Virus record (IMG/VR): IMGVR_UViG_3300037042_006844
Coordinates: 186,001 to 250,000 of that record
DNA: 64,000 nucleotides
Strand: one strand, 5' to 3'
A program made the position numbers and the translations under genes. Numbering within the stretch: the first letter of the stretch is position 1; each line of letters opens with the position of its first letter. Of the stretch, positions 1 to 58,290 are shown piece after piece. The notes beneath the pieces are model-generated. The model was given only the letters and a program-made list of their open reading frames with translations. It did no database searches and was not told where the DNA came from.

Positions 1-593
1 CAGTTATCATTCTTGGCGACGATACCACCAATCATTCCAGTCTGGCAATACGAACGCTGTATATTCCACCGTTGCCAAAACCACTGAACACTTTACTGCG
101 ATTTCATTATATAAAACAATGCGATCTGTCGGAGTTTGATTTGATTTATTATATAGATGCCGACTGTGAAGTGGTCGTTCCAATAGGAGACGAAATTTTT
201 CCAGATAAACAGGGGCAATTGTGTGTGGTAAAACACCCTTGGGCAGATAAATGTGGTTACGGTTTGGGACCGGATGATTTTTACGAAAGAAATCCTCTAT
301 CGCAAGCCGCAACGTCCGATCCTCGTAACGGTATTTACTACCAAGGGTGTTTTTTTGGCGGGTATCGTGATGATTTTCTGACTATGGTAGAATTGTTGGA
401 TAAAAATGTCAAGCTGGATTTGAACAACCGAATCATTGCCAAATGGCATGACGAGTCCCACATGAACAAATATTTCATCGACAATCCACCAAAAGAATTG
501 TCGCCATCATATGCTTATCCTGGGTGCGATTCGTATCGTGGTATATTTCCAGCCTACATCAAACACTGGAACAATGCTTGGGACGATAAATAG
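1..593 (+). CDS. Family 6 (ABO/alpha-1,3-Gal-type) glycosyltransferase, 5' partial
   Basis: Frame is open from the window start; YYIDAD (DxD), YYQGCFFGG and WHDESHMNKY motifs are characteristic of GT6. Confidence 0.85.
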   Translation, partial: VIILGDDTTNHSSLAIRTLYIPPLPKPLNTLLRFHYIKQCDLSEFDLIYYIDADCEVVVPIGDEIFPDKQGQLCVVKHPWADKCGYGLGPDDFYERNPLSQAATSDPRNGIYYQGCFFGGYRDDFLTMVELLDKNVKLDLNNRIIAKWHDESHMNKYFIDNPPKELSPSYAYPGCDSYRGIFPAYIKHWNNAWDDK

Positions 594-596
594 CAG

Positions 597-1721
597 TTAT
601 ACAGCAACGTCCATTTTGATTGTTGGATGCGAACCATAATCGATCAGTTTTATGTCGTCATACTTGAAATCAAACAAAGATTTGATTTCGGGATTCAGCC
701 GCAATTCTGGCAGCTTCATTGGCTCACGTAGCAGTTGCTCCTTAACACCATCCATATGGTTAACATAGATATGCAAATCTCCATATGTGTGAGTGAACAC
801 ACCTGGCACCATGTTGACAACGTGGGCAACCATAGCGGTCAGTAAACAATATGATGTTATGTTAAAAGGAACTCCGAGTCCCAAATCACAGCTGCGTTGG
901 TAGAGCAAACAATTCAAACGGCGGTTTGGAATATCCATTACATCAAACAATTCAATCATTTTGGTCTCGGGTTCAGCAATCAAATCGCCACCCTTAGCCA
1001 AATATAATTGAAAACGTTCATCGTAGGTCAATTCTTCTGTATGAAACTGAAACAAACAATGACATGGCGGGAGAGCGCAATGATCAACCCAATAGGGATG
1101 CCATGACGACACAATCATTCTTCTGTCGTCGGGGTTAGTTTTGAGTTTGTCCACGACCTTTTTGAGTTGGTCAACTATCCCTTCCATTGGATGATAAAAC
1201 TTTTGCTCGCCACCGTTTGGGTTTGGGACTTCCCGCTCATAGAAATAGGGAAATGCTCTCCACATTCCTCCATAAGTTCCTTCACCAAGTTCGCCAAACT
1301 GTTTTGCGAAATTCACATCTTCTTTTATCTTTTGAACAAACTCGTCTTGAGTATACGGATTTGCACTACGACATCCAGATAGTCTGGTTCCATAAATACT
1401 TATCCTGCCGCCTGCGGTCTCAAACCACTTTTTGTATTTTGCATACGCCCATTCATCCCAGATTCGAACGTCGTTGTCCACAAAGTATTTGATGTTGGTG
1501 TTGCCGCTGATAAACCAAAGCAATTCGTGGACGATTGCCCGAAAATAAACCTTTTTTGTAGTTAAAATCGGAAATGCCTCCAAATTCACATCAAACTTGG
1601 CTTGAGCACCGAAGACCCCAAGGGTATCAATGCCAGTGCGATTTTTTTTGAGCCGCCCATTTGTTAATACGTTATTCAGCAGCTTAAAATATTCGGCATC
1701 TACGTTATTAATGTTGTTCAT
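597..1721 (-). CDS. thyA: Thymidylate synthase (likely start ATG 1721-1719; ORF track starts at 1730)
   Basis: RTG, FPILTTKK, ELLWF, RRMIVSSW, LPPCH (catalytic Cys), YQRSCD, PFNI, GDLHIY motifs. Confidence 0.95.
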   Translation of the reverse strand: MNNINNVDAEYFKLLNNVLTNGRLKKNRTGIDTLGVFGAQAKFDVNLEAFPILTTKKVYFRAIVHELLWFISGNTNIKYFVDNDVRIWDEWAYAKYKKWFETAGGRISIYGTRLSGCRSANPYTQDEFVQKIKEDVNFAKQFGELGEGTYGGMWRAFPYFYEREVPNPNGGEQKFYHPMEGIVDQLKKVVDKLKTNPDDRRMIVSSWHPYWVDHCALPPCHCLFQFHTEELTYDERFQLYLAKGGDLIAEPETKMIELFDVMDIPNRRLNCLLYQRSCDLGLGVPFNITSYCLLTAMVAHVVNMVPGVFTHTYGDLHIYVNHMDGVKEQLLREPMKLPELRLNPEIKSLFDFKYDDIKLIDYGSHPTIKMDVAV

Positions 1722-1732
1722 AGTTACCATTT

Positions 1733-2959
1733 TTATTGTTTTTTATGACAATTGGTTTTTTGAACACTAGGAACTATAAATTCCTTGCTTGCAACATTCC
1801 AATAGAAACCATTTCTATTTCGTTGCTGCAATCGTTCTTGCTTCGTTATCGGCACAAGATTGAAAGACAAATTCAAAGAAGCATTCAAATCTGCGTCAAG
1901 TTCACATTGACATTTCCCACATTTGAATCTCTTACTTTTACGGTTATCCTTCCGAGTCCAACCACATGACGAACATCTTTGACTTGTATATGTTGGATTT
2001 ATCTTGTTGACAAGGACACCTTGTGCTTCAAGTTTAGAATCCAACACATCAAAGAGTTCTCCGTAATTCCAATGCTTCATGTGGCGAGAAGTATTGGTAA
2101 ATTTTCTTAAATTTTTGATGTTTTCCCTATTTACAATTTTAACACCATCGAGATTAAGTTTATTAACAATATAACGTAAATAATTGCTTCTATGGTTAAC
2201 AACTTTATTGAAATTTTTGCTATTCTTTTTCTTTTTTGCGAGTTTATTACATATGGAAGCATAGGTATGACCATGTGGACATTTATCCAACACTTGTCCG
2301 TTGCTTGTGCTTAATGTAGTTGTCTGACCAATGTCAATGCCCATCACCATTCCTTCACTTTTATTATTAACGTCATTGACATCAAACATAAATGTAGCAT
2401 TATGTTTTGAAATTCTAATGCCTTTCTTGATCGACCCATTTTGCAACATTTTATTGAAATGTTTGTGTTTTTTGAAAGGAATATTTAATTTTATTTTATT
2501 TCCGAGACTGGTTAATAATATCCATCCATCAAAATTTGTATTTTTATCAAAATTGATTTTTACAAATCTTTCGTCCAATTCACATTCAATATTATTAATG
2601 TTTGGTTTAGATATTTTATTTTTATTATAAATTTCTTGGAGTTTTCTTGATTTTTTGAATTTACCTTCTTTTTGTAGTTTCTCGATCATGAACAATCTAC
2701 GTTTTTGTTTAAGTTGTGTTCCACGAACAATGCCACTTGCTTGTTTTCCAGCACATTGTATGATCCTAGCACTCAACCAACTATTATTCTTAATTTGTGA
2801 TGTTAATTCTTTTGGGAGAAGAGATGGGATTTTATCTAAATTCCAAATCAAATCAATAAATTGAACAACGACACTGCGATATTCTCTAATAAAACGATGG
2901 AGAATATCTAATTTGCCTTTGTTTGCAAATTTAAGCGTTGTTTTTGTTGACCGTATCAT
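1733..2959 (-). CDS. tnpB: TnpB RNA-guided endonuclease (IS607-associated)
   Basis: RuvC motifs GIDIG / NRENI / DADLNAS and zinc ribbon TSQRCSSCG...FKCGKC. Confidence 0.9.
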   Translation of the reverse strand: MIRSTKTTLKFANKGKLDILHRFIREYRSVVVQFIDLIWNLDKIPSLLPKELTSQIKNNSWLSARIIQCAGKQASGIVRGTQLKQKRRLFMIEKLQKEGKFKKSRKLQEIYNKNKISKPNINNIECELDERFVKINFDKNTNFDGWILLTSLGNKIKLNIPFKKHKHFNKMLQNGSIKKGIRISKHNATFMFDVNDVNNKSEGMVMGIDIGQTTTLSTSNGQVLDKCPHGHTYASICNKLAKKKKNSKNFNKVVNHRSNYLRYIVNKLNLDGVKIVNRENIKNLRKFTNTSRHMKHWNYGELFDVLDSKLEAQGVLVNKINPTYTSQRCSSCGWTRKDNRKSKRFKCGKCQCELDADLNASLNLSFNLVPITKQERLQQRNRNGFYWNVASKEFIVPSVQKTNCHKKQ

Positions 2960-3521
2960 TTTGCAATTCTTTTATTAGTTGTTCTGTTTTTCGTTTACTT
3001 CTTCTCTGACCATAAATTCTAGCACAAAAAGACGTTATCACATTCACGAAATCTTGAATTAAATCTTCTTTTTCTTCTTTAATATTATTAATATAAATTA
3101 CATCACAATTGAAATGTTTACATGCATATTCAATATATGTTGCACCAAATCTACTTAATCTATCTTTATGTTCAACGACCAATTTAGTTGCAGCACCATC
3201 TTTTAATAATTTGATTAGTTTGGGACGAGAATCATTTAATCCACTTCCTATTTCTTTAATATTTTCATGAGTTTTCCATCCTTTAGCGTTGCAGTAATCA
3301 ATTAATCTATTAGATTGTGATTCTAAATTGTCTTTATTTTCGGATGAACTGACTCTGGCATATGTTATTACATGTTCTTTTTTATTATTTGTCAACTCAT
3401 TTGGAACGATTATAGTTCCAGTTGGTAATTTGTATGCGCCGATGATTTGTCCACGATTGAACATCATCCATGCGGTTCTATACAAAATGCCTTTTTCTTT
3501 TGCCCAGTGACTTAATTTCAT
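2931..3521 (-). CDS. tnpA: IS607 transposase (MerR-like HTH + serine recombinase)
   Basis: YARVSS catalytic motif, EIGSGLN, VEHKDRLSRFG, SFCARIYG. Confidence 0.95.
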   Translation of the reverse strand: MKLSHWAKEKGILYRTAWMMFNRGQIIGAYKLPTGTIIVPNELTNNKKEHVITYARVSSSENKDNLESQSNRLIDYCNAKGWKTHENIKEIGSGLNDSRPKLIKLLKDGAATKLVVEHKDRLSRFGATYIEYACKHFNCDVIYINNIKEEKEDLIQDFVNVITSFCARIYGQRRSKRKTEQLIKELQNDTVNKNNA

Positions 3522-3684
3522 TTTTATTAATGGTTACTATTACATATAATAAATATCAATGAGAAATAGAAAACAACAAAAAATAATAAAAAACAATAAA
3601 ATTATTTATCTATAACTATACATCCTGCTTGATTCGTGATTGCCATACACGACAACACATTTTGATAATAATAATCATTCATAT

Positions 3685-4551
3685 TTATTTTTTATAACTT
3701 TCACAAAATACCAATGCTCTATCCATCACATCACCACAACTCTCTCTGATCACCATCTGAGCAGCACCATCGTAAACGGTTTCTGTGTTGTTGATGATTA
3801 CGAATGTGCAATTTTTGTTGCGGCGATTTACCAATCCTGCTGCTGGCTGCACACTCAACGAACTACCAATTACAATGAGCAGATCAGCTTCATTGATGAC
3901 TCTATATGCAGTGTCGTATGTTTCGTCATTCAAACTTTCATCAAACAAAACGGTTGTGGGTCGCACTTTTCCACCACAATCACATTTGGCGATGTCGGAG
4001 GAATTCAACATATCGTCAAACTGCTCGTATGTGTATTTACGATAGCAACTAATACAATGTGCTTTTGATCCATTACCGTGTAGATCGAGCACGTTGACGC
4101 TTCCCGCTTTTTGATGTAAATTATCAATGTTTTGAGTCACCACCCATTTGATCTTGCCCATCTTTTCCAATTCAACCAAAGCCACATGCGCTTTGTTTGG
4201 TTGTTTGCGTGTTATCCCAGTCAATCTATGTTTATAGAAAGAGTAGAAAAGTTTGGGATTCTCCCTAAACATTTTTTTGCTAAGAATGTCTTGAGGGTTG
4301 TATCCTTGAAACTCTCCGCTTTGGTATATGCCATTATTTGATCGAAAATCTGGAATGCCAGACTCAGTAGATATACCAGCACCGGTGAAGGTCACAATGT
4401 TTGTTGCTTCCAACACCAATTCGTTGAACGTAACGGATTTCAACTTATCTGGCAGAGGCCCGGATGACTCAATGGGATCAGGACGTTGGTTTTTCAACCT
4501 CTCGGCTTTCAATTCATTGAGCGCATTCAAAATGGCATTCTGATCGATCAT
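3685..4551 (-). CDS. Sir2/CobB-family NAD-dependent deacylase
   Basis: TGAGISTESGIPDFRS, TQNIDNLH, LHG, CxxC..CxC zinc site, GSSL. Confidence 0.95.
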   Translation of the reverse strand: MIDQNAILNALNELKAERLKNQRPDPIESSGPLPDKLKSVTFNELVLEATNIVTFTGAGISTESGIPDFRSNNGIYQSGEFQGYNPQDILSKKMFRENPKLFYSFYKHRLTGITRKQPNKAHVALVELEKMGKIKWVVTQNIDNLHQKAGSVNVLDLHGNGSKAHCISCYRKYTYEQFDDMLNSSDIAKCDCGGKVRPTTVLFDESLNDETYDTAYRVINEADLLIVIGSSLSVQPAAGLVNRRNKNCTFVIINNTETVYDGAAQMVIRESCGDVMDRALVFCESYKK

Positions 4552-4919
4552 AGTTTTTCCCAGGCCTGAATTTCTGTTTGGAGAATCGCGATTTCATTTT
4601 GAAGTGAGTCAATCCGACCCTTTTTGGATCGAATTTGATGTTCAACGTTTTTTCGCCGCTGAATGGCGGACATGCGCTGTATAACCTTGACAACCTCTTC
4701 GGCGTTTTGACAACCAAGAATATCATTGGTCCAATCTTCGGCACCATCTTCTGTTTTGTTAGCCATCTCCGGCCAGAGGCTCAATATGCTGGATTCGATT
4801 TGCTTGATTATAGGAGCTATTGTTGTGGTGTTGATGTCACGAATTGCTGCTGCGCAAATTTCGATCTTTTGATAATGATCCAATGTTGTGGGTTTCGTTT
4901 TAGTGTTTGTGTTGTTCAT
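4548..4919 (-). CDS. Hypothetical protein, C-terminal coiled coil
   Basis: ORF in tightly packed minus-strand run, ATGA overlap with sir2. Confidence 0.6.
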   Translation of the reverse strand: MNNTNTKTKPTTLDHYQKIEICAAAIRDINTTTIAPIIKQIESSILSLWPEMANKTEDGAEDWTNDILGCQNAEEVVKVIQRMSAIQRRKNVEHQIRSKKGRIDSLQNEIAILQTEIQAWEKL

Positions 4920-4939
4920 ATTATGTTGTTGTTATGTTA

Positions 4940-5260
4940 TTATTTGAGGCTGTCTAGGTATTCCATCACTCTGTTGCGCAGTTCATGGTCGTGGGCGAAG
5001 CACCGGGGCCAAACCTCGGTCATGTGAAGAAAATAAGGGTTTCTTTCGTCGCCGTGTGCATGGAATTTGATTTCTTGGCTCACTTCGTTGAACGACTTTT
5101 CTGCGATATAACCCGTTTGACCAAACTGTAAAAATGGATGATGTCGAGTAATAACTGTTGCCGGAACCGTTCCGCCGAATGTAAGCTGCTCCCCTTGTGG
5201 TTTAGGACTGTATATGGCGGTTATCGTATCGAAAATTTGCTTGATAGTTTTTGATGTCAT
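4940..5260 (-). CDS. Hypothetical protein
   Basis: ORF in tightly packed minus-strand run. Confidence 0.55.
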   Translation of the reverse strand: MTSKTIKQIFDTITAIYSPKPQGEQLTFGGTVPATVITRHHPFLQFGQTGYIAEKSFNEVSQEIKFHAHGDERNPYFLHMTEVWPRCFAHDHELRNRVMEYLDSLK

Positions 5261-5269
5261 ATTCTATTT

Positions 5270-5455
5270 TTATTCGCCTCTTTTGAAACTGCCTTTCAAA
5301 CTATACAGCAGATTCTTGATTTCGTCAAGACTTCTAACACGATCTCTATATAGCATCTCTGTTTTGATACACTCTTCGTCAACTCTGCGAAGAAGATCGT
5401 TGATCTTCTGCATCGTCACCGTTGGCTTAGTTCGTTCAAACTCATCTATGTTCAT
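5270..5455 (-). CDS. Small hypothetical protein
   Basis: Preceded by TTGACA-N16-TAGCAT-N6-ATG promoter. Confidence 0.6.
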   Translation of the reverse strand: MNIDEFERTKPTVTMQKINDLLRRVDEECIKTEMLYRDRVRSLDEIKNLLYSLKGSFKRGE

Positions 5456-5461
5456 AGGAAT

Positions 5462-5489
5462 ATGCTATCATCCATTGTTGATCTGTCAA
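5462..5489 (-). promoter_or_regulatory. Sigma70-like promoter, 16-bp spacer, leaderless
   Basis: TTGACA (5489-5484) N16 TAGCAT (5467-5462), 6 nt before ATG. Confidence 0.65.
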
Positions 5490-6445
5490 GCTGCTAAAAT
5501 TTCCATGCTTTTTGCCGCTCGACCCAAATCGGGATATGCCCAATCCCCCGCCATGTGATAATCGATTCTACAATGATTTTCTGTAAGATAATCAGTCGGT
5601 CCTCCGTAGTTTGTGGCGATAATTTTTTTGCCATAGTTCACAGCATCATACAAACTCAACCCAAAACCTTCGCCTTTGTGTAAACTCACATAACAGTCAC
5701 CCAAACTATGAATTTCGAGCAGTTCTTTGTTGCTCACATTTTTGCTGATAAGATACACGTTATCGCCATATGGTTTGACCGCATTCTCCACATGCTTGAT
5801 GCTTGCTTGTGAATAGTTACCGTAGTGCAGTTTCAACAACAGTTGAGTGTTTCTGTGAGTTTCGTTGAATCGGCTGTATGTGTCCAGCAGATCAAGTATT
5901 CCTTTTCTATCCACATATTCGGCTATGCAATAGAACGTGAATTTGTTGTTGGGTATGGTTCTACCGCGATAATCACACAAACTCACAGCGTCTCGGGCTG
6001 GCAGTGTTTGTTCAAGAAATATGTGGGGAAAAACCACAATTGGTATTGTTACTCCGCTTGCGGCAAAATAGGTGTGGTTGAACGTGCTGGGAACCCACAA
6101 TTCATCTAATTGGTTAATCTCAGTAACCCAATCGGCAGCAACTCGCTGTGTTTCCCAAGTGCAATAGCCTATCTGCTTGGTGTAATAGTTTTTTTTGACT
6201 TTAGGACGGATCATACTCCATAGGTTTGGGATGGTGTGATAGATTTGCGCATCATATTTGGATAGTGCCGTCATATTACCACAAACTCGTTGGTCAACCA
6301 ACCATTCTCTATCAATTTGTGAATCATCAAACTTCAAAGGAGCAAAACACAGATTGTGACCTTGATTCAAAAAATATAGCATATTGCCTTTGGCGGCAGT
6401 TGCATAACCAGACGTTCCGTATTGGGCAATGTATTCGATGTTCAC
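5486..6445 (-). CDS. GT-B (GT4-like) glycosyltransferase
   Basis: QYGTSGYATAAKG N-terminus, WVPS, RKG, GEGFGL motif; paralog of 44725-46143 and 53103-55733. Confidence 0.85.
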   Translation of the reverse strand: MNIEYIAQYGTSGYATAAKGNMLYFLNQGHNLCFAPLKFDDSQIDREWLVDQRVCGNMTALSKYDAQIYHTIPNLWSMIRPKVKKNYYTKQIGYCTWETQRVAADWVTEINQLDELWVPSTFNHTYFAASGVTIPIVVFPHIFLEQTLPARDAVSLCDYRGRTIPNNKFTFYCIAEYVDRKGILDLLDTYSRFNETHRNTQLLLKLHYGNYSQASIKHVENAVKPYGDNVYLISKNVSNKELLEIHSLGDCYVSLHKGEGFGLSLYDAVNYGKKIIATNYGGPTDYLTENHCRIDYHMAGDWAYPDLGRAAKSMEILAA

Positions 6446-7665: not shown

Positions 7666-8238
7666 TCAATCCCCCGACGAAAACAACGTGCGTTTAAGTG
7701 CAATTATGCGAGGCTCATGATTTTTGTAAGAAGTCATCGTTGCGGAAACAAATTTGGTGTCAAGCTGTTTGAACGGTTGTTTATGAGATTTGTTGTATCC
7801 ATGCACATAACTTAGCAAACACAGCACTGTTTGTTTATCGGCGGCATGGCTGGTCCATTTTGCAGTTTTGTGCGCATATTTCCAAGCATCAATTTCGGTT
7901 TTCATTCGGTATTTACTCACAAACACACACGATTTGCTGCGACTTAGATTCCACAATACCCGATTCATATTGTAGTAAATCATGGGATGCTCATTGACTA
8001 TATGACCGATTTCGTGAAGTGCTCCAAAATATGTTTTAACCGTGCGGATTTCGGGGTTGATCCAAATCAATTTACTCAACATGTTTGCCGCATTGTCGGT
8101 TTTTCTGAAAACTATTTTGATGTCGTGCTCTTCGCATAACGCACGGATATGATCCATGTATTTCGTTTTAGGGATGTAGCGAAGCCGTTTTTCATGGTCC
8201 CAAGTGTAGTCCGTCTCGATATCGTAGTAGGTCGTCAT
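7666..8238 (-). CDS. Hypothetical protein with HExxH (zincin/ImmA-like) motif
   Basis: ALHEIGH and downstream EIDAW; TTGACA-N16-TATCTT promoter upstream. Confidence 0.6.
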   Translation of the reverse strand: MTTYYDIETDYTWDHEKRLRYIPKTKYMDHIRALCEEHDIKIVFRKTDNAANMLSKLIWINPEIRTVKTYFGALHEIGHIVNEHPMIYYNMNRVLWNLSRSKSCVFVSKYRMKTEIDAWKYAHKTAKWTSHAADKQTVLCLLSYVHGYNKSHKQPFKQLDTKFVSATMTSYKNHEPRIIALKRTLFSSGD

Positions 8239-8277
8239 TCAGACCCAAGATACCATCAGTTGCGAGCTTGTCAACAA

Positions 8278-8934
8278 CTAGACGCATTCTGTGGTGTGCG
8301 GATCGCCCTCGGCATCATCACCCCGACTTTCTACAATTACTTTGCCAATATAACCACCGTCTCCATTACGCATGGCATCGGCACGAACTTTATAAACAAC
8401 TCCGTCTTTACTCACAATACGAAACGTCGCGTGACTGTCACGTTTATCTTTAACCGCAGATTCCCATTCAACTGAAATACGCTCACGATCCGCTTCATGC
8501 AAAACGCTTTTCCAACCATTGTTGAGAAAATCATCCACAGAATATCCAGTTAGTTTGCAGTATTTGTCATTTACCCATGTGCAAGTGCCGTCGTCCCGAG
8601 ACTCAAAAATGGGTTCGTCGCGATTATTATCCAGCAACCAGCGTTGCCGATGCATGATGACAGACGTGGCTTGTGTATTCTCTTCCAATTTTCGTTCGAT
8701 GGTGTTTACTTTGTCTTTGAGACTAGTTCCGTGGTTCGGAGTAATTTCTGAATAGATAGTTTCAATCATGGTGTGTAGTTTGCACACTTTTCCGTATTCA
8801 GATTTGACAGTTTTGAAAATGAACATGAGCAATTTATAAAGAATGCCAATAACTGCACTTGCGGCGATTATTAGCTGGAGAATGGAATATATACTTTTCC
8901 AATCGAACGAACTTAGAATAATATCTGTAATCAT
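8278..8934 (-). CDS. Membrane-anchored PAS-domain protein
   Basis: N-terminal hydrophobic helix, coiled coil, then PAS signature (IFESRDDGTCTWVNDKYCKLTGYS...GWKSVLHEADR). Confidence 0.8.
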   Translation of the reverse strand: MITDIILSSFDWKSIYSILQLIIAASAVIGILYKLLMFIFKTVKSEYGKVCKLHTMIETIYSEITPNHGTSLKDKVNTIERKLEENTQATSVIMHRQRWLLDNNRDEPIFESRDDGTCTWVNDKYCKLTGYSVDDFLNNGWKSVLHEADRERISVEWESAVKDKRDSHATFRIVSKDGVVYKVRADAMRNGDGGYIGKVIVESRGDDAEGDPHTTECV

Positions 8935-9025
8935 GCTCTAATAAATAGCACGATCGCCCTCATTAATAAAAAAACTCTAATCGCTTAGAGTCTTTTCGTG
9001 GGTCGGGGGTGTGTTTATATGGTTT

Positions 9026-9676
9026 CTAGTCCCACAAACTATCAAAATGCTCTGCAAACAACAGTAGTCCTTTTCGTTTGCGATTTTCCAAATCGTCGCA
9101 ACGTTCGATATATTGCTGCCATGCCAGCTTTTCTTCTTGGGTTTTTTCACGGTGCAGCCAACCAAGATAATCTCCATTGTTTTGATGATTTGCTGCTGGG
9201 ATATCGGGTATGGGATTGATTTTTTCGGGATCGTCGATGTATTCAAACGTCCAAATCAATTCATCCAGAATATCATTCCATTCTTTGATTACAGCATCAT
9301 CGTATGAATCGCCGTTCATCGGATGGCATTTCAAATACATAGAATTGGGGATGCCACACCTATCCATGCGGCGATAATGTTTGAGTCGGGGAAGAATGTA
9401 TTTGGTCAATGTGCTATTAAGATTCCAACACTCTTCGTTGCTCACACCATAACGCACCTTTTGATACGACGATTTTGCCCACAAACGAACAGACTCATAG
9501 CGATCTACGGCTCCCCAGCCCAAACAACGAGGAACTCGGTCGCACCACCAATCAATGTATCTGTTGATACGATAATATTCGCTGACGCAGCAACAATTGT
9601 CTGGTGTGGCATCTTTTACAACAGCTGCTTTTTTTGATGGAGAAACAAAATTTAGTTCGAGTTGATGTGCTCTCAT
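9026..9676 (-). CDS. Phage hypothetical protein
   Basis: Long ORF ending KGLLLFAEHFDSLWD; TTGACA-N16-TAGAAT-N6-ATG upstream. Confidence 0.7.
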   Translation of the reverse strand: MRAHQLELNFVSPSKKAAVVKDATPDNCCCVSEYYRINRYIDWWCDRVPRCLGWGAVDRYESVRLWAKSSYQKVRYGVSNEECWNLNSTLTKYILPRLKHYRRMDRCGIPNSMYLKCHPMNGDSYDDAVIKEWNDILDELIWTFEYIDDPEKINPIPDIPAANHQNNGDYLGWLHREKTQEEKLAWQQYIERCDDLENRKRKGLLLFAEHFDSLWD

Positions 9677-9764
9677 GTTATTATTCTAGCAGACATAAAA
9701 AAACTGTCAAGCATAACTCTTGTTTTGCTTTTTGCAAAACCCATGCTACTATTTATACAGAGCT

Positions 9765-51509: not shown

Positions 51510-52670
51510 ATGATAACATACAATGTCAAATTAAAGTTTGCTAAACAAGATGATTACAATAATCTTCTTGAATCGCTCAAACTAAATCAATTGGCTTGGA
51601 ATATCATAAGTGAAGAACGATTCTCAATGACGGGTGGAAGATTGAAGCTTCTTCACGACAAGTGTTATTATAAAGTAAAAGAAGCAATTCCTACAATTCC
51701 TTCTCAATTTATCATTAAAGCAGAACAAGATGTAATTGCTACATATAAAACTATCAAGTCAAATAAACATAAACTTGATTCTCCTGCAATAAAAAAGAAT
51801 CTATCAATACAACTAGATAAACGCATATACAAGTGGATAGATAAAACTAATATCAAAATAACAACATTAGATAAACAAGCAATCGCTTCGTTTGATGTGT
51901 ATGATAAATTAAACCAATTTGACTTCAATAAGTTAAAAGATCCAAAACTATTTTTCAAAAATGGAGATTTTTACCTAAGTCTAATATTTGATACGAATGT
52001 TCCTTTTGTAGATAACAATAAAATCATAGGAATTGATGTTGGATTAAAAAGACTTGTATCAACAAGTGAAGGTATCATAATTAAAGGCAATGAATTCAAT
52101 GGACATAAACGTAAAATTCGTTGGAACAAAAGAAAACTTCAATCCAAGAAAAAATCACATTCCGCAAGAACAAAACATAAAAAACTTAAAAGGCGTGAAT
52201 CAAACTTTAGCAGAAATTATATACACAATGTTACAAAGAATGTAATTGTAAATACAAGTGCAAATACACTCGTAGTAGAAGATTTGAGCAAAATCAAAAG
52301 CAAAAATAAAGGTAGAAGATTTAATAATAGATTGAGTCAACTTCCATTTTTTGCGTTTAGATCCATATTAACATACAAGGCACAACTTTATGGGAAAAAA
52401 GTTGAAACAGTTAACCCTGCCTATACAAGCCAAATAGACCATAGAGGTTTAGCTGGTGGAAAAAGAAAGGGATGTAGATATTATGGATTGGATAAAGTAA
52501 TATTAGATTCGGATGTAAATGCCGCAATCAATATTGCAAATAGATATGTAAACAATTTAAGTTTGCATAAACACTCTGTTTCGTGCTGCAAAGCACTTGA
52601 TGGACAGGTGACTGTCAACTCACCAATCGTCGGAAGTTTCTTCCGGCAAGCCCCTATGGCTTTAGCCTAG
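51510..52670 (+). CDS. tnpB: TnpB RNA-guided endonuclease lacking canonical zinc-ribbon cysteines
   Basis: GIDVG / VVEDL / DSDVNAA RuvC triad; YKAQ, VNPAYTSQ. Confidence 0.92.
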   Translation: MITYNVKLKFAKQDDYNNLLESLKLNQLAWNIISEERFSMTGGRLKLLHDKCYYKVKEAIPTIPSQFIIKAEQDVIATYKTIKSNKHKLDSPAIKKNLSIQLDKRIYKWIDKTNIKITTLDKQAIASFDVYDKLNQFDFNKLKDPKLFFKNGDFYLSLIFDTNVPFVDNNKIIGIDVGLKRLVSTSEGIIIKGNEFNGHKRKIRWNKRKLQSKKKSHSARTKHKKLKRRESNFSRNYIHNVTKNVIVNTSANTLVVEDLSKIKSKNKGRRFNNRLSQLPFFAFRSILTYKAQLYGKKVETVNPAYTSQIDHRGLAGGKRKGCRYYGLDKVILDSDVNAAINIANRYVNNLSLHKHSVSCCKALDGQVTVNSPIVGSFFRQAPMALA

Positions 52671-58149: not shown

Positions 58150-58290
58150 TTAAGTTGCCTTAACAAAAGAGTCCATTCCGACTCTCAAAATGTTTCGTGC
58201 TGCGTTAAGGTCTCGTCCAATGTTAAGATTACAAATAGGACATTTGTGCTGTCTCTCCGACAACTCCTTCTTAACTATGGTTCCGCACCC
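58150..58290 (-). pseudogene. tnpB: C-terminal remnant of a third TnpB, followed by its own right end (hairpin 58120-58141, TTCAC ending 58111)
   Basis: Translates as GCGTIVKKELSERQHKCPICNLNIGRDLNAARNILRVGMDSFVKAT*. Confidence 0.85.

What the first reader, a model, noticed from the sequence alone, without database searches (positions are those of the whole stretch)
1720..3619. An unrelated IS607 element is also inserted in a start codon, that of thyA
Seen: on the minus strand the element begins ATAGTTATAG and ends GGTAACTAT; collapsing on the shared AT gives AGCAGGATGT-ATG-AACAAC. The right end therefore rebuilds the thyA ATG, and adds an in-frame upstream ATG (MVT). The target again reads ATGAA. 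Established: IS607 serine recombinases cross over at a dinucleotide core, GG in the best-studied members. Inference: an AT core would be a variant specificity; a mechanistically different family has converged on the same start-codon niche, and its TnpB guide would be the first codons of thyA, coupling homing to a replication gene.
Basis: partly seen in the sequence, partly recalled or inferred. Interest (0 to 1): 0.7.

Follow-up and report, generated by a model that had tools for sequence, protein, structure and literature searches.

The report
TAT-ended IS607 element abutting phage thyA
An intact IS607-type mobile element that recombines at (G)TAT instead of the usual GG sits against the thymidylate synthase start codon of a 300-kb freshwater phage; it marks a 2.2-kb gene loss rather than a clean insertion, and the match to the start codon follows from how this phage's genes begin.

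Summary
A 1,901-bp IS607-family element (window 1720-3620, minus strand: tnpA serine recombinase, tnpB) begins TATAGTTATAG and ends GGTAACTAT, and its last AT supplies the A and T of the thyA ATG.

The boundaries are confirmed three ways:
- The same element (3 differences in 1,901 bp) lies in a Verrucomicrobiota-like chromosome with other flanks.
- At least 10 further insertion contexts from about five diverged lineages all read (G)|TAT...GTAA(C/T)TAT|N.
- An element-free sister phage reads ACG-TAT-GAG at its thyA start.

The crossover lies inside TAT (AT or TA cannot be told apart) and is preceded by G. Every characterised IS607 uses GG, so this is a real variant.

It is not a simple insertion. 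The sister phage has five genes, including DHFR, between SIR2 and thyA.

The "start-codon niche" is not supported as an adaptation. In this phage 62% of genes begin T-ATG, only 2 of 13 right-end junctions fall on real start codons, and any conservative crossover at TAT rebuilds the ATG.

A thyA-directed TnpB guide is plausible, because a conserved structured RNA ends at the right end, but it is untested.

The parts
1720..3620 (-). IS607-family element, 1,901 bp counting the TAT at each end (LE TAT 3620-3618, RE TAT 1722-1720); GC 29.6% against 41% for the phage
   Evidence: An identical-length copy with 3 substitutions lies in L050/L051 with different flanks.
3610..3620 (-). Left-end terminal motif TATAGTTATAG. 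It is preceded by G (3621), the conserved target base.
   Evidence: The base before the LE TAT is G in 9 of 10 independent contexts.
3586..3601 (-). Subterminal repeat TTTTATTGTTTTTTAT, inverted copy of 1731-1746; candidate TnpA binding site
   Evidence: 16/16 inverted match between LE and RE. Role inferred from IS607 end architecture (paper).
2931..3521 (-). tnpA, a 196-aa IS607-type serine recombinase (N-terminal HTH, catalytic YARVSSS)
   Evidence: Pfam Resolvase 1.2e-17. NCBIfam NF033518 171.9 bits, cut-off 110. PDB ISC1926 and IS1535 TnpA catalytic domains, E 3e-27.
1733..2959 (-). tnpB, 408 aa, overlapping tnpA by 29 nt. RuvC D (GIDIG), E (NRENI) and D (DADLNAS) and the CxxC...CxxC zinc ribbon are present.
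   Evidence: Pfam PF07282 5.5e-19. NCBIfam guided_TnpB 82.6 bits, below the cut-off of 100. PDB Cas12f/TnpB alignments. Motifs.
1720..1959 (-). Candidate omega-RNA scaffold: conserved structured region over the tnpB 3' end, running to the right end
   Evidence: MFE z-score -3.63, 0 of 200 shuffles as stable. Consensus fold of 9 copies has 55 pairs, 10 with compensatory changes. No Rfam match.
1700..1719 (-). Predicted TnpB guide-matching target, GAACAACATTAATAACGTAG (thyA bases 3-22)
   Evidence: Inference from the TnpB/IS607 mechanism (papers). Homology among copies stops exactly at 1720.
597..1721 (-). thyA, 374 aa, intact. Its ATG (1721-1719) takes A and T from the element end. An alternative in-frame ATG lies at 1730, 2 nt after the tnpB stop.
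   Evidence: Pfam 3.8e-97, NCBIfam, homologue starts, sister allele P0002.
3621..3684 (-). Left flank: the first 21 codons (MNDYYYQNVLSCMAITNQAGC) and start region of 'geneX', foreign to the sister phage at this position
   Evidence: Found uninterrupted in other runs, continuing ...GGA TGT ATT AAA TAT ATG AGT.... Follows g125 in L054. Absent from L135.
3685..4551 (-). SIR2-family gene, the upstream syntenic anchor
   Evidence: Pfam SIR2 2.5e-54. Window 9000-3685 is 99.2% identical to L135 499-5818.

Best explanation
**What it is.** An intact, probably active IS607-family insertion sequence (tnpA serine recombinase plus tnpB RNA-guided nuclease). It belongs to a subfamily whose recombination core and target are (G)TAT rather than GG. 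It sits in a ~300-kb jumbo phage of freshwater and sediment.

**How the junctions form.**
- Shown: TAT stands at both junctions. Every independent copy ends ...GTAA(C/T)TAT and begins TAT..., and G precedes the left TAT.
- Inferred from the serine-recombinase mechanism: TnpA exchanges strands at a 2-bp core inside TAT, either AT or TA.
- Because this phage's genes usually begin T-ATG-A, a TAT target often overlaps a start codon. Conservative recombination there rebuilds the ATG automatically, as at thyA.

**How the locus arose.** It is not a simple insertion. The left junction lies at a G|TAT site in codon 21/22 of another gene (geneX). The right junction lies at the G|TAT|G site of the thyA start. 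The DNA between them (the rest of geneX or g226, DHFR and g138 in relatives) is gone. This is an element-mediated deletion or replacement. The mechanism is inferred: either homologous recombination between two copies, or TnpA recombination with a second TAT site.

**Effect on thyA.** thyA stays intact and co-oriented. Inferred: it is expressed by read-through from the element, with possible translational coupling, since the tnpB stop lies 2 nt before the in-frame ATG at 1730.

**TnpB role (inferred).** The tnpB 3' region specifies a conserved structured RNA that ends at the right end. By the family mechanism it would carry thyA bases 3 to about 22 as guide and use a GTAT-type TAM. TnpB would then cut element-free thyA alleles in co-infecting phages and favour retention or spread of the element.

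**Exchange with a bacterium.** The same element, 99.8% identical, lies in a low-GC Verrucomicrobiota-like chromosome. This indicates recent exchange and suggests the host lineage.
For: - **Identity:**
- **Boundaries and TAT core:** the same element with other flanks. Related copies are the window, L002, L032/L040, L034/L036, L037, L038, L039, L138, L140, L144, L145 and L146. Element-free thyA reads ACG|TAT|GAG in L135-L137 and runs X7/X9.
- **GG is the norm:** it is the core in all characterised IS607 systems (papers).
- **Replacement of 2.18 kb with five genes:**. None of the five proteins is found in this genome by tblastn.
- **Left flank is the geneX 5' end:**
- **A second variant with the same right breakpoint:** run X22 reads DHFR-CAAG|TATAGTTATA|TATGAAC.
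- **Single copy, not an assembly collapse:** contigs from the source run cross both element boundaries with 0 differences and no loose ends there (table 8).
- **Start context:**
- **Structured RNA at the right end:**
- **Bacterial context of the twin copy:**
- **Phage nature:** PolB is 39.5% identical to that of Microcystis phage Mel-JY01. Relatives carry Gp23 and clamp-loader genes.
Against: - No excision product, circle junction or small RNA has been observed; the public data are assembled contigs only.
- AT and TA cores cannot be told apart.
- The order of events (insertion at thyA first or at geneX first) and the deletion mechanism are not resolved.
- The short stretch 3694-3703 at the left homology break remains unexplained.
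- TnpB scores below the NCBIfam guided_TnpB cut-off, and no Rfam omega-RNA family matches.
- The structured region overlaps coding sequence, which inflates conservation.
- The sister allele differs from the predicted guide at position 3 (GAG against GAA).
- The host assignment rests on one flanking protein at 72% identity.
Confidence: 0.75

Rival explanations
1. One reading: a single clean transposition into the sequence AGCAGGATGT-ATG-AACAAC, directly upstream of or in the thyA start codon, with nothing lost.
For: Both flanks end in TAT, and collapsing them gives an open reading frame into thyA. The right junction is a genuine G-TAT-G target in element-free alleles.
Against: The element-free sister phage (99.2% and 97.3% identical flanks) has 2,181 bp with five genes where the window has 64-80 bp plus the element. 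The window's left flank occurs elsewhere as the start of another gene, following g125. An exact-pattern search for the collapsed site in metagenome contigs found nothing.
Confidence: 0.07
2. Assembly artefact: the real genome has two copies (one in geneX, one at thyA) with the genes between them, and the assembler collapsed the repeat. Alternatively, the contig joins two strains inside the element.
For: The independent contigs of the source run break inside the element at about 2440-2469, and their depths differ (37.6 against 45.4). The contig's own end lies in another IS607 copy. Several strains coexist in related samples.
Against: Contigs from the source run pass through both element boundaries into the flanks with no differences, and no alternative flank is seen at 1720 or 3620 (tables 7 and 8). 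Element depth is not double that of the flanks. Both flanks are syntenic with one sister genome.
Confidence: 0.1
3. Cassette import: the block 'geneX 5' end plus element' entered from a co-infecting relative (as in run X5 and L054) by recombination. One crossover was near the SIR2 end and the other at or in the element or thyA, rather than a deletion within one lineage.
For: The geneX-LE junction is identical in L054/X5 and in the window. The geneX 5' segment is identical at nucleotide level across phages whose neighbouring DNA differs. The region is mosaic among relatives.
Against: It needs an illegitimate left crossover. It does not by itself explain why the right breakpoint is exactly the TAT of the element end. 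It overlaps with the best explanation rather than excluding it.
Confidence: 0.25
4. Adaptive start-codon targeting: the element family has evolved to land on start codons, as a safe harbour with built-in ATG regeneration and a guide in conserved N-terminal codons.
For: The window and L039 have TAT|G on true starts, and L032 lies 1 nt upstream of a start. Where a downstream gene is close, elements are co-oriented with it. The TATG at the thyA start is conserved in 20 relatives, which would make a durable homing target.
Against: Only 2 of 13 independent right junctions are on real starts. The others are intergenic, after stop codons, or inside genes (geneX codon 22, DHFR codon -3). With 62% of genes starting TATG, about 10% of non-disruptive TAT sites are starts; the chance of at least 2 of 8 is 0.18. 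No base is conserved after TAT (G, A, C, A, T, T, C, C, G, C, G, A, G).
Confidence: 0.12

Closest known systems
IS607 (Helicobacter pylori), IS1535 and ISC1926: the canonical IS607 family
   Same: Same gene pair and order, with tnpA overlapping tnpB. TnpA has an N-terminal HTH and a C-terminal serine-recombinase domain (NCBIfam equivalog passed; PDB 6dgc/6dgb hits). There is no target-site duplication and there are subterminal repeats at both ends.
   Different: The ends and target are (G)TAT instead of GG. The core is therefore palindromic (AT or TA), as at the crossover of Tn3/gamma-delta resolvase site I (own knowledge), whereas GG is directional. There is also a short 7-nt terminal inverted match (ATAGTTA/TAACTAT).
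CboIStron and ISXfa1 (IS607-type TnpA plus TnpB, experimentally characterised)
   Same: The logic of TAM equal to TnpA target is paralleled. The left flank reads G-TAT and the right end reads C-TAT, just as TAM TGGG contrasts with the right end TCGG in CboIStron, which avoids self-cleavage. An omega-RNA candidate runs to the right end, and scarless excision and homing are expected.
   Different: The TAM would be AT-rich (GTAT) rather than TGGG or GGG. There is no group I intron. Nothing has been tested biochemically here.
ISFba1-type IS607 TnpB with RAGATH-18-derived guide RNA
   Same: An IS607-associated RNA-guided TnpB.
   Different: Those use TAM AGGAG or GAGGG and a guide RNA separate from the coding sequence. 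Here there is no Rfam/RAGATH-18 match, and the structured region overlaps the tnpB 3' end.
Fanzor2 / IS607EU of giant viruses (ISvMimi, ApmFz2)
   Same: A virus-borne IS607-type element with a TnpB homologue.
   Different: This virus is a tailed-phage type, not a giant virus. The RuvC glutamate lies about 50 residues before the zinc finger (the canonical TnpB layout), not 6 residues before it as in Fanzor. The ApmFz2 TAM is NGGG.
Homing elements in phage thymidylate synthase genes (T4 td intron with I-TevI; own knowledge)
   Same: A selfish nuclease-bearing element lodged at a conserved nucleotide-metabolism gene of a large phage, leaving the gene functional.
   Different: This is a transposon with an RNA-guided nuclease sitting outside the coding sequence. 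It is not a self-splicing intron, and homing has not been demonstrated.

Membership tests
IS607 family insertion sequence | Transposase is a small serine recombinase with N-terminal DNA-binding domain and C-terminal catalytic domain | tested here: met
   NF033518 transpos_IS607 equivalog 171.9 bits (cut-off 110), covering residues 5-178. Pfam Resolvase covers residues 51-180. Best PDB matches are IS607-family TnpA catalytic domains 6dgc and 6dgb.
IS607 family insertion sequence | tnpB follows and overlaps tnpA in the same orientation | tested here: met
   tnpA is at 2931-3521 and tnpB at 1733-2959, both on the minus strand, with a 29-nt overlap.
IS607 family insertion sequence | No target-site duplication; a short core shared by both ends and the target | tested here: met
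   Only TAT is shared by the two junctions. The element-free allele has a single TAT.
IS607 family insertion sequence | GG core dinucleotide at the ends and the target (the rule in characterised members) | tested here: not met
   The ends are TAT...TAT in all 13 contexts examined, and targets read G-TAT. The GG rule comes from papers.
IS607 family insertion sequence | Excision as a double-stranded circle with a scarless donor joint | not testable with these tools
   Only assembled contigs were available, and no circle junction was seen.
TnpB / omega-RNA (OMEGA) RNA-guided nuclease | RuvC D-E-D triad and zinc ribbon | tested here: met
   GIDIG, NRENI and DADLNAS are present, plus CSSCG...CGKC. 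They align to the catalytic motifs of solved Cas12f/TnpB structures. PF07282 68.5 bits.
TnpB / omega-RNA (OMEGA) RNA-guided nuclease | Whole-protein family score | tested here: inconclusive
   NF040570 guided_TnpB 82.6 bits, below the cut-off of 100. NF038280 IS607_TnpB 23 bits against a cut-off of 350.
TnpB / omega-RNA (OMEGA) RNA-guided nuclease | Structured guide-RNA scaffold at the tnpB 3' end, terminating at the right end and followed by a variable guide | tested here: inconclusive
   z-score -3.63. 10 of 55 pairs are compensatory across 9 copies. Similarity stops at the TAT. No Rfam family matches and there are no RNA data.
TnpB / omega-RNA (OMEGA) RNA-guided nuclease | TAM at the left flank matching the transposase target | tested here: inconclusive
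   G-TAT is conserved in 9 of 10 left flanks, and the right end has C-TAT. Cleavage was not tested.
Fanzor2 / IS607EU | Relocated RuvC-II glutamate about 6 residues before the zinc finger; eukaryotic or giant-virus host | tested here: not met
   The glutamate (NRENI, about residue 277) lies about 50 residues before CSSCG (criterion from the paper). The genome is phage-like.

The most novel reading that the evidence does not exclude
A distinct IS607 subfamily has switched its recombination core from GG to a palindromic AT/TA within (G)TAT, and its TnpB has co-evolved an AT-rich GTAT TAM. Its target coincides with the T-ATG-A start context of Shine-Dalgarno-less phages and hosts. As a result it shuttles between Verrucomicrobiota chromosomes and their jumbo phages. 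It lands harmlessly at gene starts and drives gene-cassette deletion and replacement (here the loss of DHFR next to thyA) between TAT sites.
Probability: 0.3. Interest if true: 0.6.

Novelty: new variant of a known kind. Interest (0 to 1): 0.45.

Why it matters
All experimentally characterised IS607 transposases and their TnpB or Fanzor2 partners use GG cores and G-rich TAMs. A natural subfamily with a (G)TAT core offers three things:
- A test of how the small serine transposases read their crossover dinucleotide, including how direction is kept with a palindromic core.
- A candidate compact nuclease with an AT-rich TAM.
- A concrete case of an insertion sequence reshaping a phage nucleotide-metabolism module, with DHFR lost and thyA kept.

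The 99.8%-identical copy in a Verrucomicrobiota-like chromosome also gives a host lead for an uncultured jumbo phage.

The result corrects the attractive idea of a start-codon niche. It reduces to target motif plus start context plus selection against disruptive insertions.

Tried and rejected
**Searches that found nothing**
- Exact patterns in viral contigs for the spacer, the X7-type thyA junction and the intact geneX: none.
- Rfam scan of 1500-3800 at E<=1: none.

**Searches that were uninformative**
- Capsid_NCLDV family search in the genome. The controls did not ring either, so it says nothing. A giant-virus/Fanzor reading was considered first and dropped after the PolB match to phages and the glutamate position.
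- L033, a TnpB at 57% identity, is a tnpB-only copy without recognisable ends and gave no information on the core.
- The sigma-70 promoter scan found no more sites than shuffled sequence, and no terminators. Nothing can be said about an internal promoter for thyA.

**Ideas considered and left open or rejected**
- The 64-bp left flank as a separate mini-element bounded by TAT on both sides. It is more simply the 5' end of geneX, whose own start is C-TAT-G.
- X22's 10-nt left-end remnant could not be derived from a simple AT- or TA-core crossover between the ends. It is left unexplained.

**Not attempted**
- No protein-complex or structure prediction was run, because no claim depends on one.
Full report
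**1. What is in the sequence**

All features below are on the minus strand.
- A SIR2-family gene lies at 3685-4551.
- It is followed by 64 nt, then G|TATAGTTATAG at 3621|3620.
- Next come a 196-aa serine recombinase (2931-3521) and an overlapping 408-aa TnpB (1733-2959).
- The TnpB stop codon TAA is followed by AA-ATG-GTA-ACT-ATG-AAC-AAC..., which runs into a 374-aa thymidylate synthase (597-1721).

The recombinase passes the NCBIfam IS607-transposase equivalog (171.9 bits, cut-off 110). Its best solved relatives are IS607-family TnpA catalytic domains. TnpB has the Cas12f1-like TNB domain and intact RuvC D/E/D and zinc-ribbon motifs. It scores below the NCBIfam TnpB cut-off.

The only correction is that the junctions share TAT, three bases rather than two.

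**2. What the genome is**

The window is part of a 303,564-bp IMG/VR virus record with 41% GC.
- Its family-B polymerase is closest (39.5% identity over its full length) to that of Microcystis phage Mel-JY01 and other large tailed phages.
- Relatives carrying sister elements encode T4-type Gp23 and phage clamp-loader proteins.

It is therefore a jumbo phage, not a giant virus, and the nuclease is a TnpB, not a Fanzor. Its RuvC-II glutamate sits about 50 residues before the zinc finger (criterion from the paper). The genome holds 11 matches to the TnpB zinc-ribbon family.

**3. Boundaries and core**

Three independent lines fix the ends.

(a) *The same element in another genome.* The exact TnpA protein is encoded on contigs from other samples (L050, L051, L053). 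They carry the same 1,901 bp with 3 substitutions and diverge from the window exactly outside TAT...TAT. The flanks there read ...CCCCAAGAGG|TAT[element]TAT|ATACAATAC....
- Those contigs are 32% GC and encode cytochromes c, a phosphate-binding protein and DUF2490.
- The binding protein's best genome matches are freshwater Verrucomicrobiota MAGs, at up to 72% identity.
- The element itself is 29.6% GC.

(b) *Related copies.* These have TnpA at 77-91% or TnpB at 57-85% identity. They comprise a second partial copy at the end of this contig, several other phage contigs, a 710-bp non-autonomous derivative (L039) and degenerate remnants.
- All of them end GTAA(C/T)TAT, and similarity stops there.
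- The left ends begin TAT.
- The base before the left TAT is G in 9 of 10 independent contexts.
- The base after the right TAT is unconstrained.

(c) *Element-free alleles.* The ThyA cluster contains one other sequence (P0002), which is encoded on a 164-kb contig (L135) and others. Window 1722-1 aligns to L135 at 97.3% identity, and homology ends exactly at TAT. L135 reads ...GGAAACGACG|TAT|GAGCAAC.... Runs X7 and X9 show the same.

So the target is G-TAT and the crossover lies within TAT. AT and TA cannot be distinguished from these data.

In every characterised system the core is GG and the TAM is G-rich:

| System | Core or TAM | Source |
|---|---|---|
| IS607 | GG core | |
| CboIStron | TAM TGGG | |
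| ISXfa1 | TAM GGG | |
| ApmFz2 | TAM NGGG | |
| ISFba1-type | TAM AGGAG / GAGGG | |
| 2026 review | GG-terminated, G-rich TAMs | |

The left flank G-TAT against the right end C-TAT mirrors the TGGG/TCGG contrast that spares CboIStron from self-cleavage.

**4. It is not a simple insertion**

L135 is syntenic with the window on both sides:

| Window | L135 | Identity |
|---|---|---|
| 9000-3685 | 499-5818 | 99.2% |
| 1722-1 | 8000-9724 | 97.3% |

Between these blocks L135 has 2,181 bp with five genes: g53, g125, g226, a 198-aa DHFR and g138, whose end overlaps the thyA start. The window has none of these. tblastn of all five proteins against the whole phage record finds nothing.

Instead the window has the element preceded by 64 nt. 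These 64 nt are the start and first 21 codons of another gene, 'geneX'.
- In L054 and run X5, geneX follows g125 and carries the element at the identical junction.
- In runs X2, X4 and X22, geneX is uninterrupted and reads ...GGA TGT ATT AAA TAT ATG AGT....

A third variant, in run X22, has the thyA junction preceded by only 10 nt of the left end. These 10 nt are joined to a G|TAT site three codons before the DHFR stop.

The left and right flanks of the window's element therefore come from two different G-TAT sites, and the DNA between them is missing. Candidate mechanisms are:
- homologous recombination between two element copies;
- recombinase-mediated joining to a second TAT site;
- import of a 'geneX 5' end plus element' block from a co-infecting relative.

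The data do not decide among them.

An assembly collapse is unlikely. The source run's own contigs cross both element boundaries with no differences and no alternative flanks, and element depth is not doubled.

**5. The start-codon idea**

Counts below use 359 crude ORF-based genes in this phage.
- T precedes the ATG in 62% of genes and A follows it in 56%. G is depleted upstream, so there is no Shine-Dalgarno motif.
- 'TATGA' is therefore the generic start context. This explains why two unrelated elements appear to share an 'ATGAA' target.
- There are 13,753 TAT sites. Of these, 222 overlap predicted starts and 2,039 are intergenic. About 10% of non-disruptive TAT sites are start codons.
- Among 13 independent right-end junctions, two lie on real starts (thyA here, and a 61-aa gene in L039) and one lies 1 nt upstream of a start (L032).
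- The rest are intergenic, next to a stop codon, on tiny spurious ORFs, or inside genes.
- This is not more than expected (P = 0.18 for at least 2 of 8).

ATG regeneration follows from conservative recombination at TAT. Because the terminal 7 nt are inverted repeats, it would occur in either orientation.

What does stand out is co-orientation with the nearby downstream gene, which is consistent with selection against polar insertions. The TATG at the thyA start is conserved across 20 related viral contigs.

**6. TnpB and guide**

The last ~240 nt of the element fold much better than shuffled sequence (z = -3.63). Across nine copies the consensus structure has 55 pairs, 10 with compensatory changes. 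A further terminal hairpin changes sequence but keeps its pairing: ATTGTC/GACAAT, ATATTGAAAA/TTTTCAATAT and TTTCAT/ATGAAA (read directly). No Rfam family matches.

By the established mechanism, the RNA would continue into the flank. The guide would then be thyA bases 3 to about 22, and the TAM would be G-TAT. This is inference, not observation. The sister allele differs from the predicted guide at position 3.

**7. Expression of thyA**

thyA is intact but is cut off from its former upstream region. The tnpB stop codon lies 2 nt before the in-frame ATG at 1730 and 11 nt before the native ATG. Read-through with translational coupling is therefore the likeliest route, though this is inferred. The consensus promoter scan is uninformative.

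**8. Verdict**

- The AT-type core is supported and is the most interesting part, a new variant of IS607.
- The simple-insertion picture and the start-codon-niche convergence are not supported.
- The thyA guide and homing remain a reasonable but untested inference.

Noticed in passing
L050:5902-7802 (also L051, L053): The same IS607 element (3 substitutions in 1,901 bp, all in tnpB) sits in a 32%-GC contig with cytochrome c, phosphate-binding and DUF2490 genes. The flanking protein best matches freshwater Verrucomicrobiota MAGs. This is a likely host or donor link for the phage.
   Followed up: partly
L135:5819-7999 compared with window 1723-3684: The element-free sister phage has five genes, including a 198-aa DHFR, between SIR2 and thyA. 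None of the five is found anywhere in this phage record, so this lineage keeps thyA but has lost its DHFR.
   Followed up: yes
whole genome G000 (window = G000:186001-250000): The translation start context is T-ATG-A (T at -1 in 62% and A at +4 in 56% of 359 crude genes), with G depleted upstream. There is no Shine-Dalgarno signal.
   Followed up: yes
G000:183411-184613 (just left of the window); window 51510-52670; window about 58189-58290: The 303-kb phage carries 11 TnpB zinc-ribbon matches (about 9 genes), mostly tnpB-only IS605-type. The 400-aa copy just outside the window is absent from sister phage L135. Its right end (...GGTGGGTAGTTCAT) is also found inside g125 in L054.
   Followed up: partly
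L002:1463-2366 (G000:302661-303564): The contig ends inside a second IS607 copy of the same subfamily (79% DNA identity). Its right end abuts the N-terminus of a C2H2-zinc-finger/HNH-like ORF (TAT|ATA TGT AAA CAA TGT). The assembly probably broke at the repeat.
   Followed up: partly
Run X22, junction at window 1722: One strain has thyA preceded by only TATAGTTATA (the first 10 nt of the left end), joined to a G|TAT site 3 codons before the DHFR stop. It looks like a footprint that a simple AT- or TA-core crossover does not produce. It is unexplained.
   Followed up: partly
L039:771-1480; L037:8045-8494; L145 about 3420-3500: The subfamily has decayed members. L039 holds a 710-bp non-autonomous derivative that keeps both ends and the RNA region. 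L037 holds a 5'-truncated remnant. L145 holds a copy whose left terminus is missing, next to a divergent gene's start.
   Followed up: partly
window 3694-3703: About ten bases at the end of SIR2 (TGAAAGTTAT) match neither the sister phage L135 nor the L054-type donor. The left edge of the rearrangement is therefore not cleanly defined.
   Followed up: no
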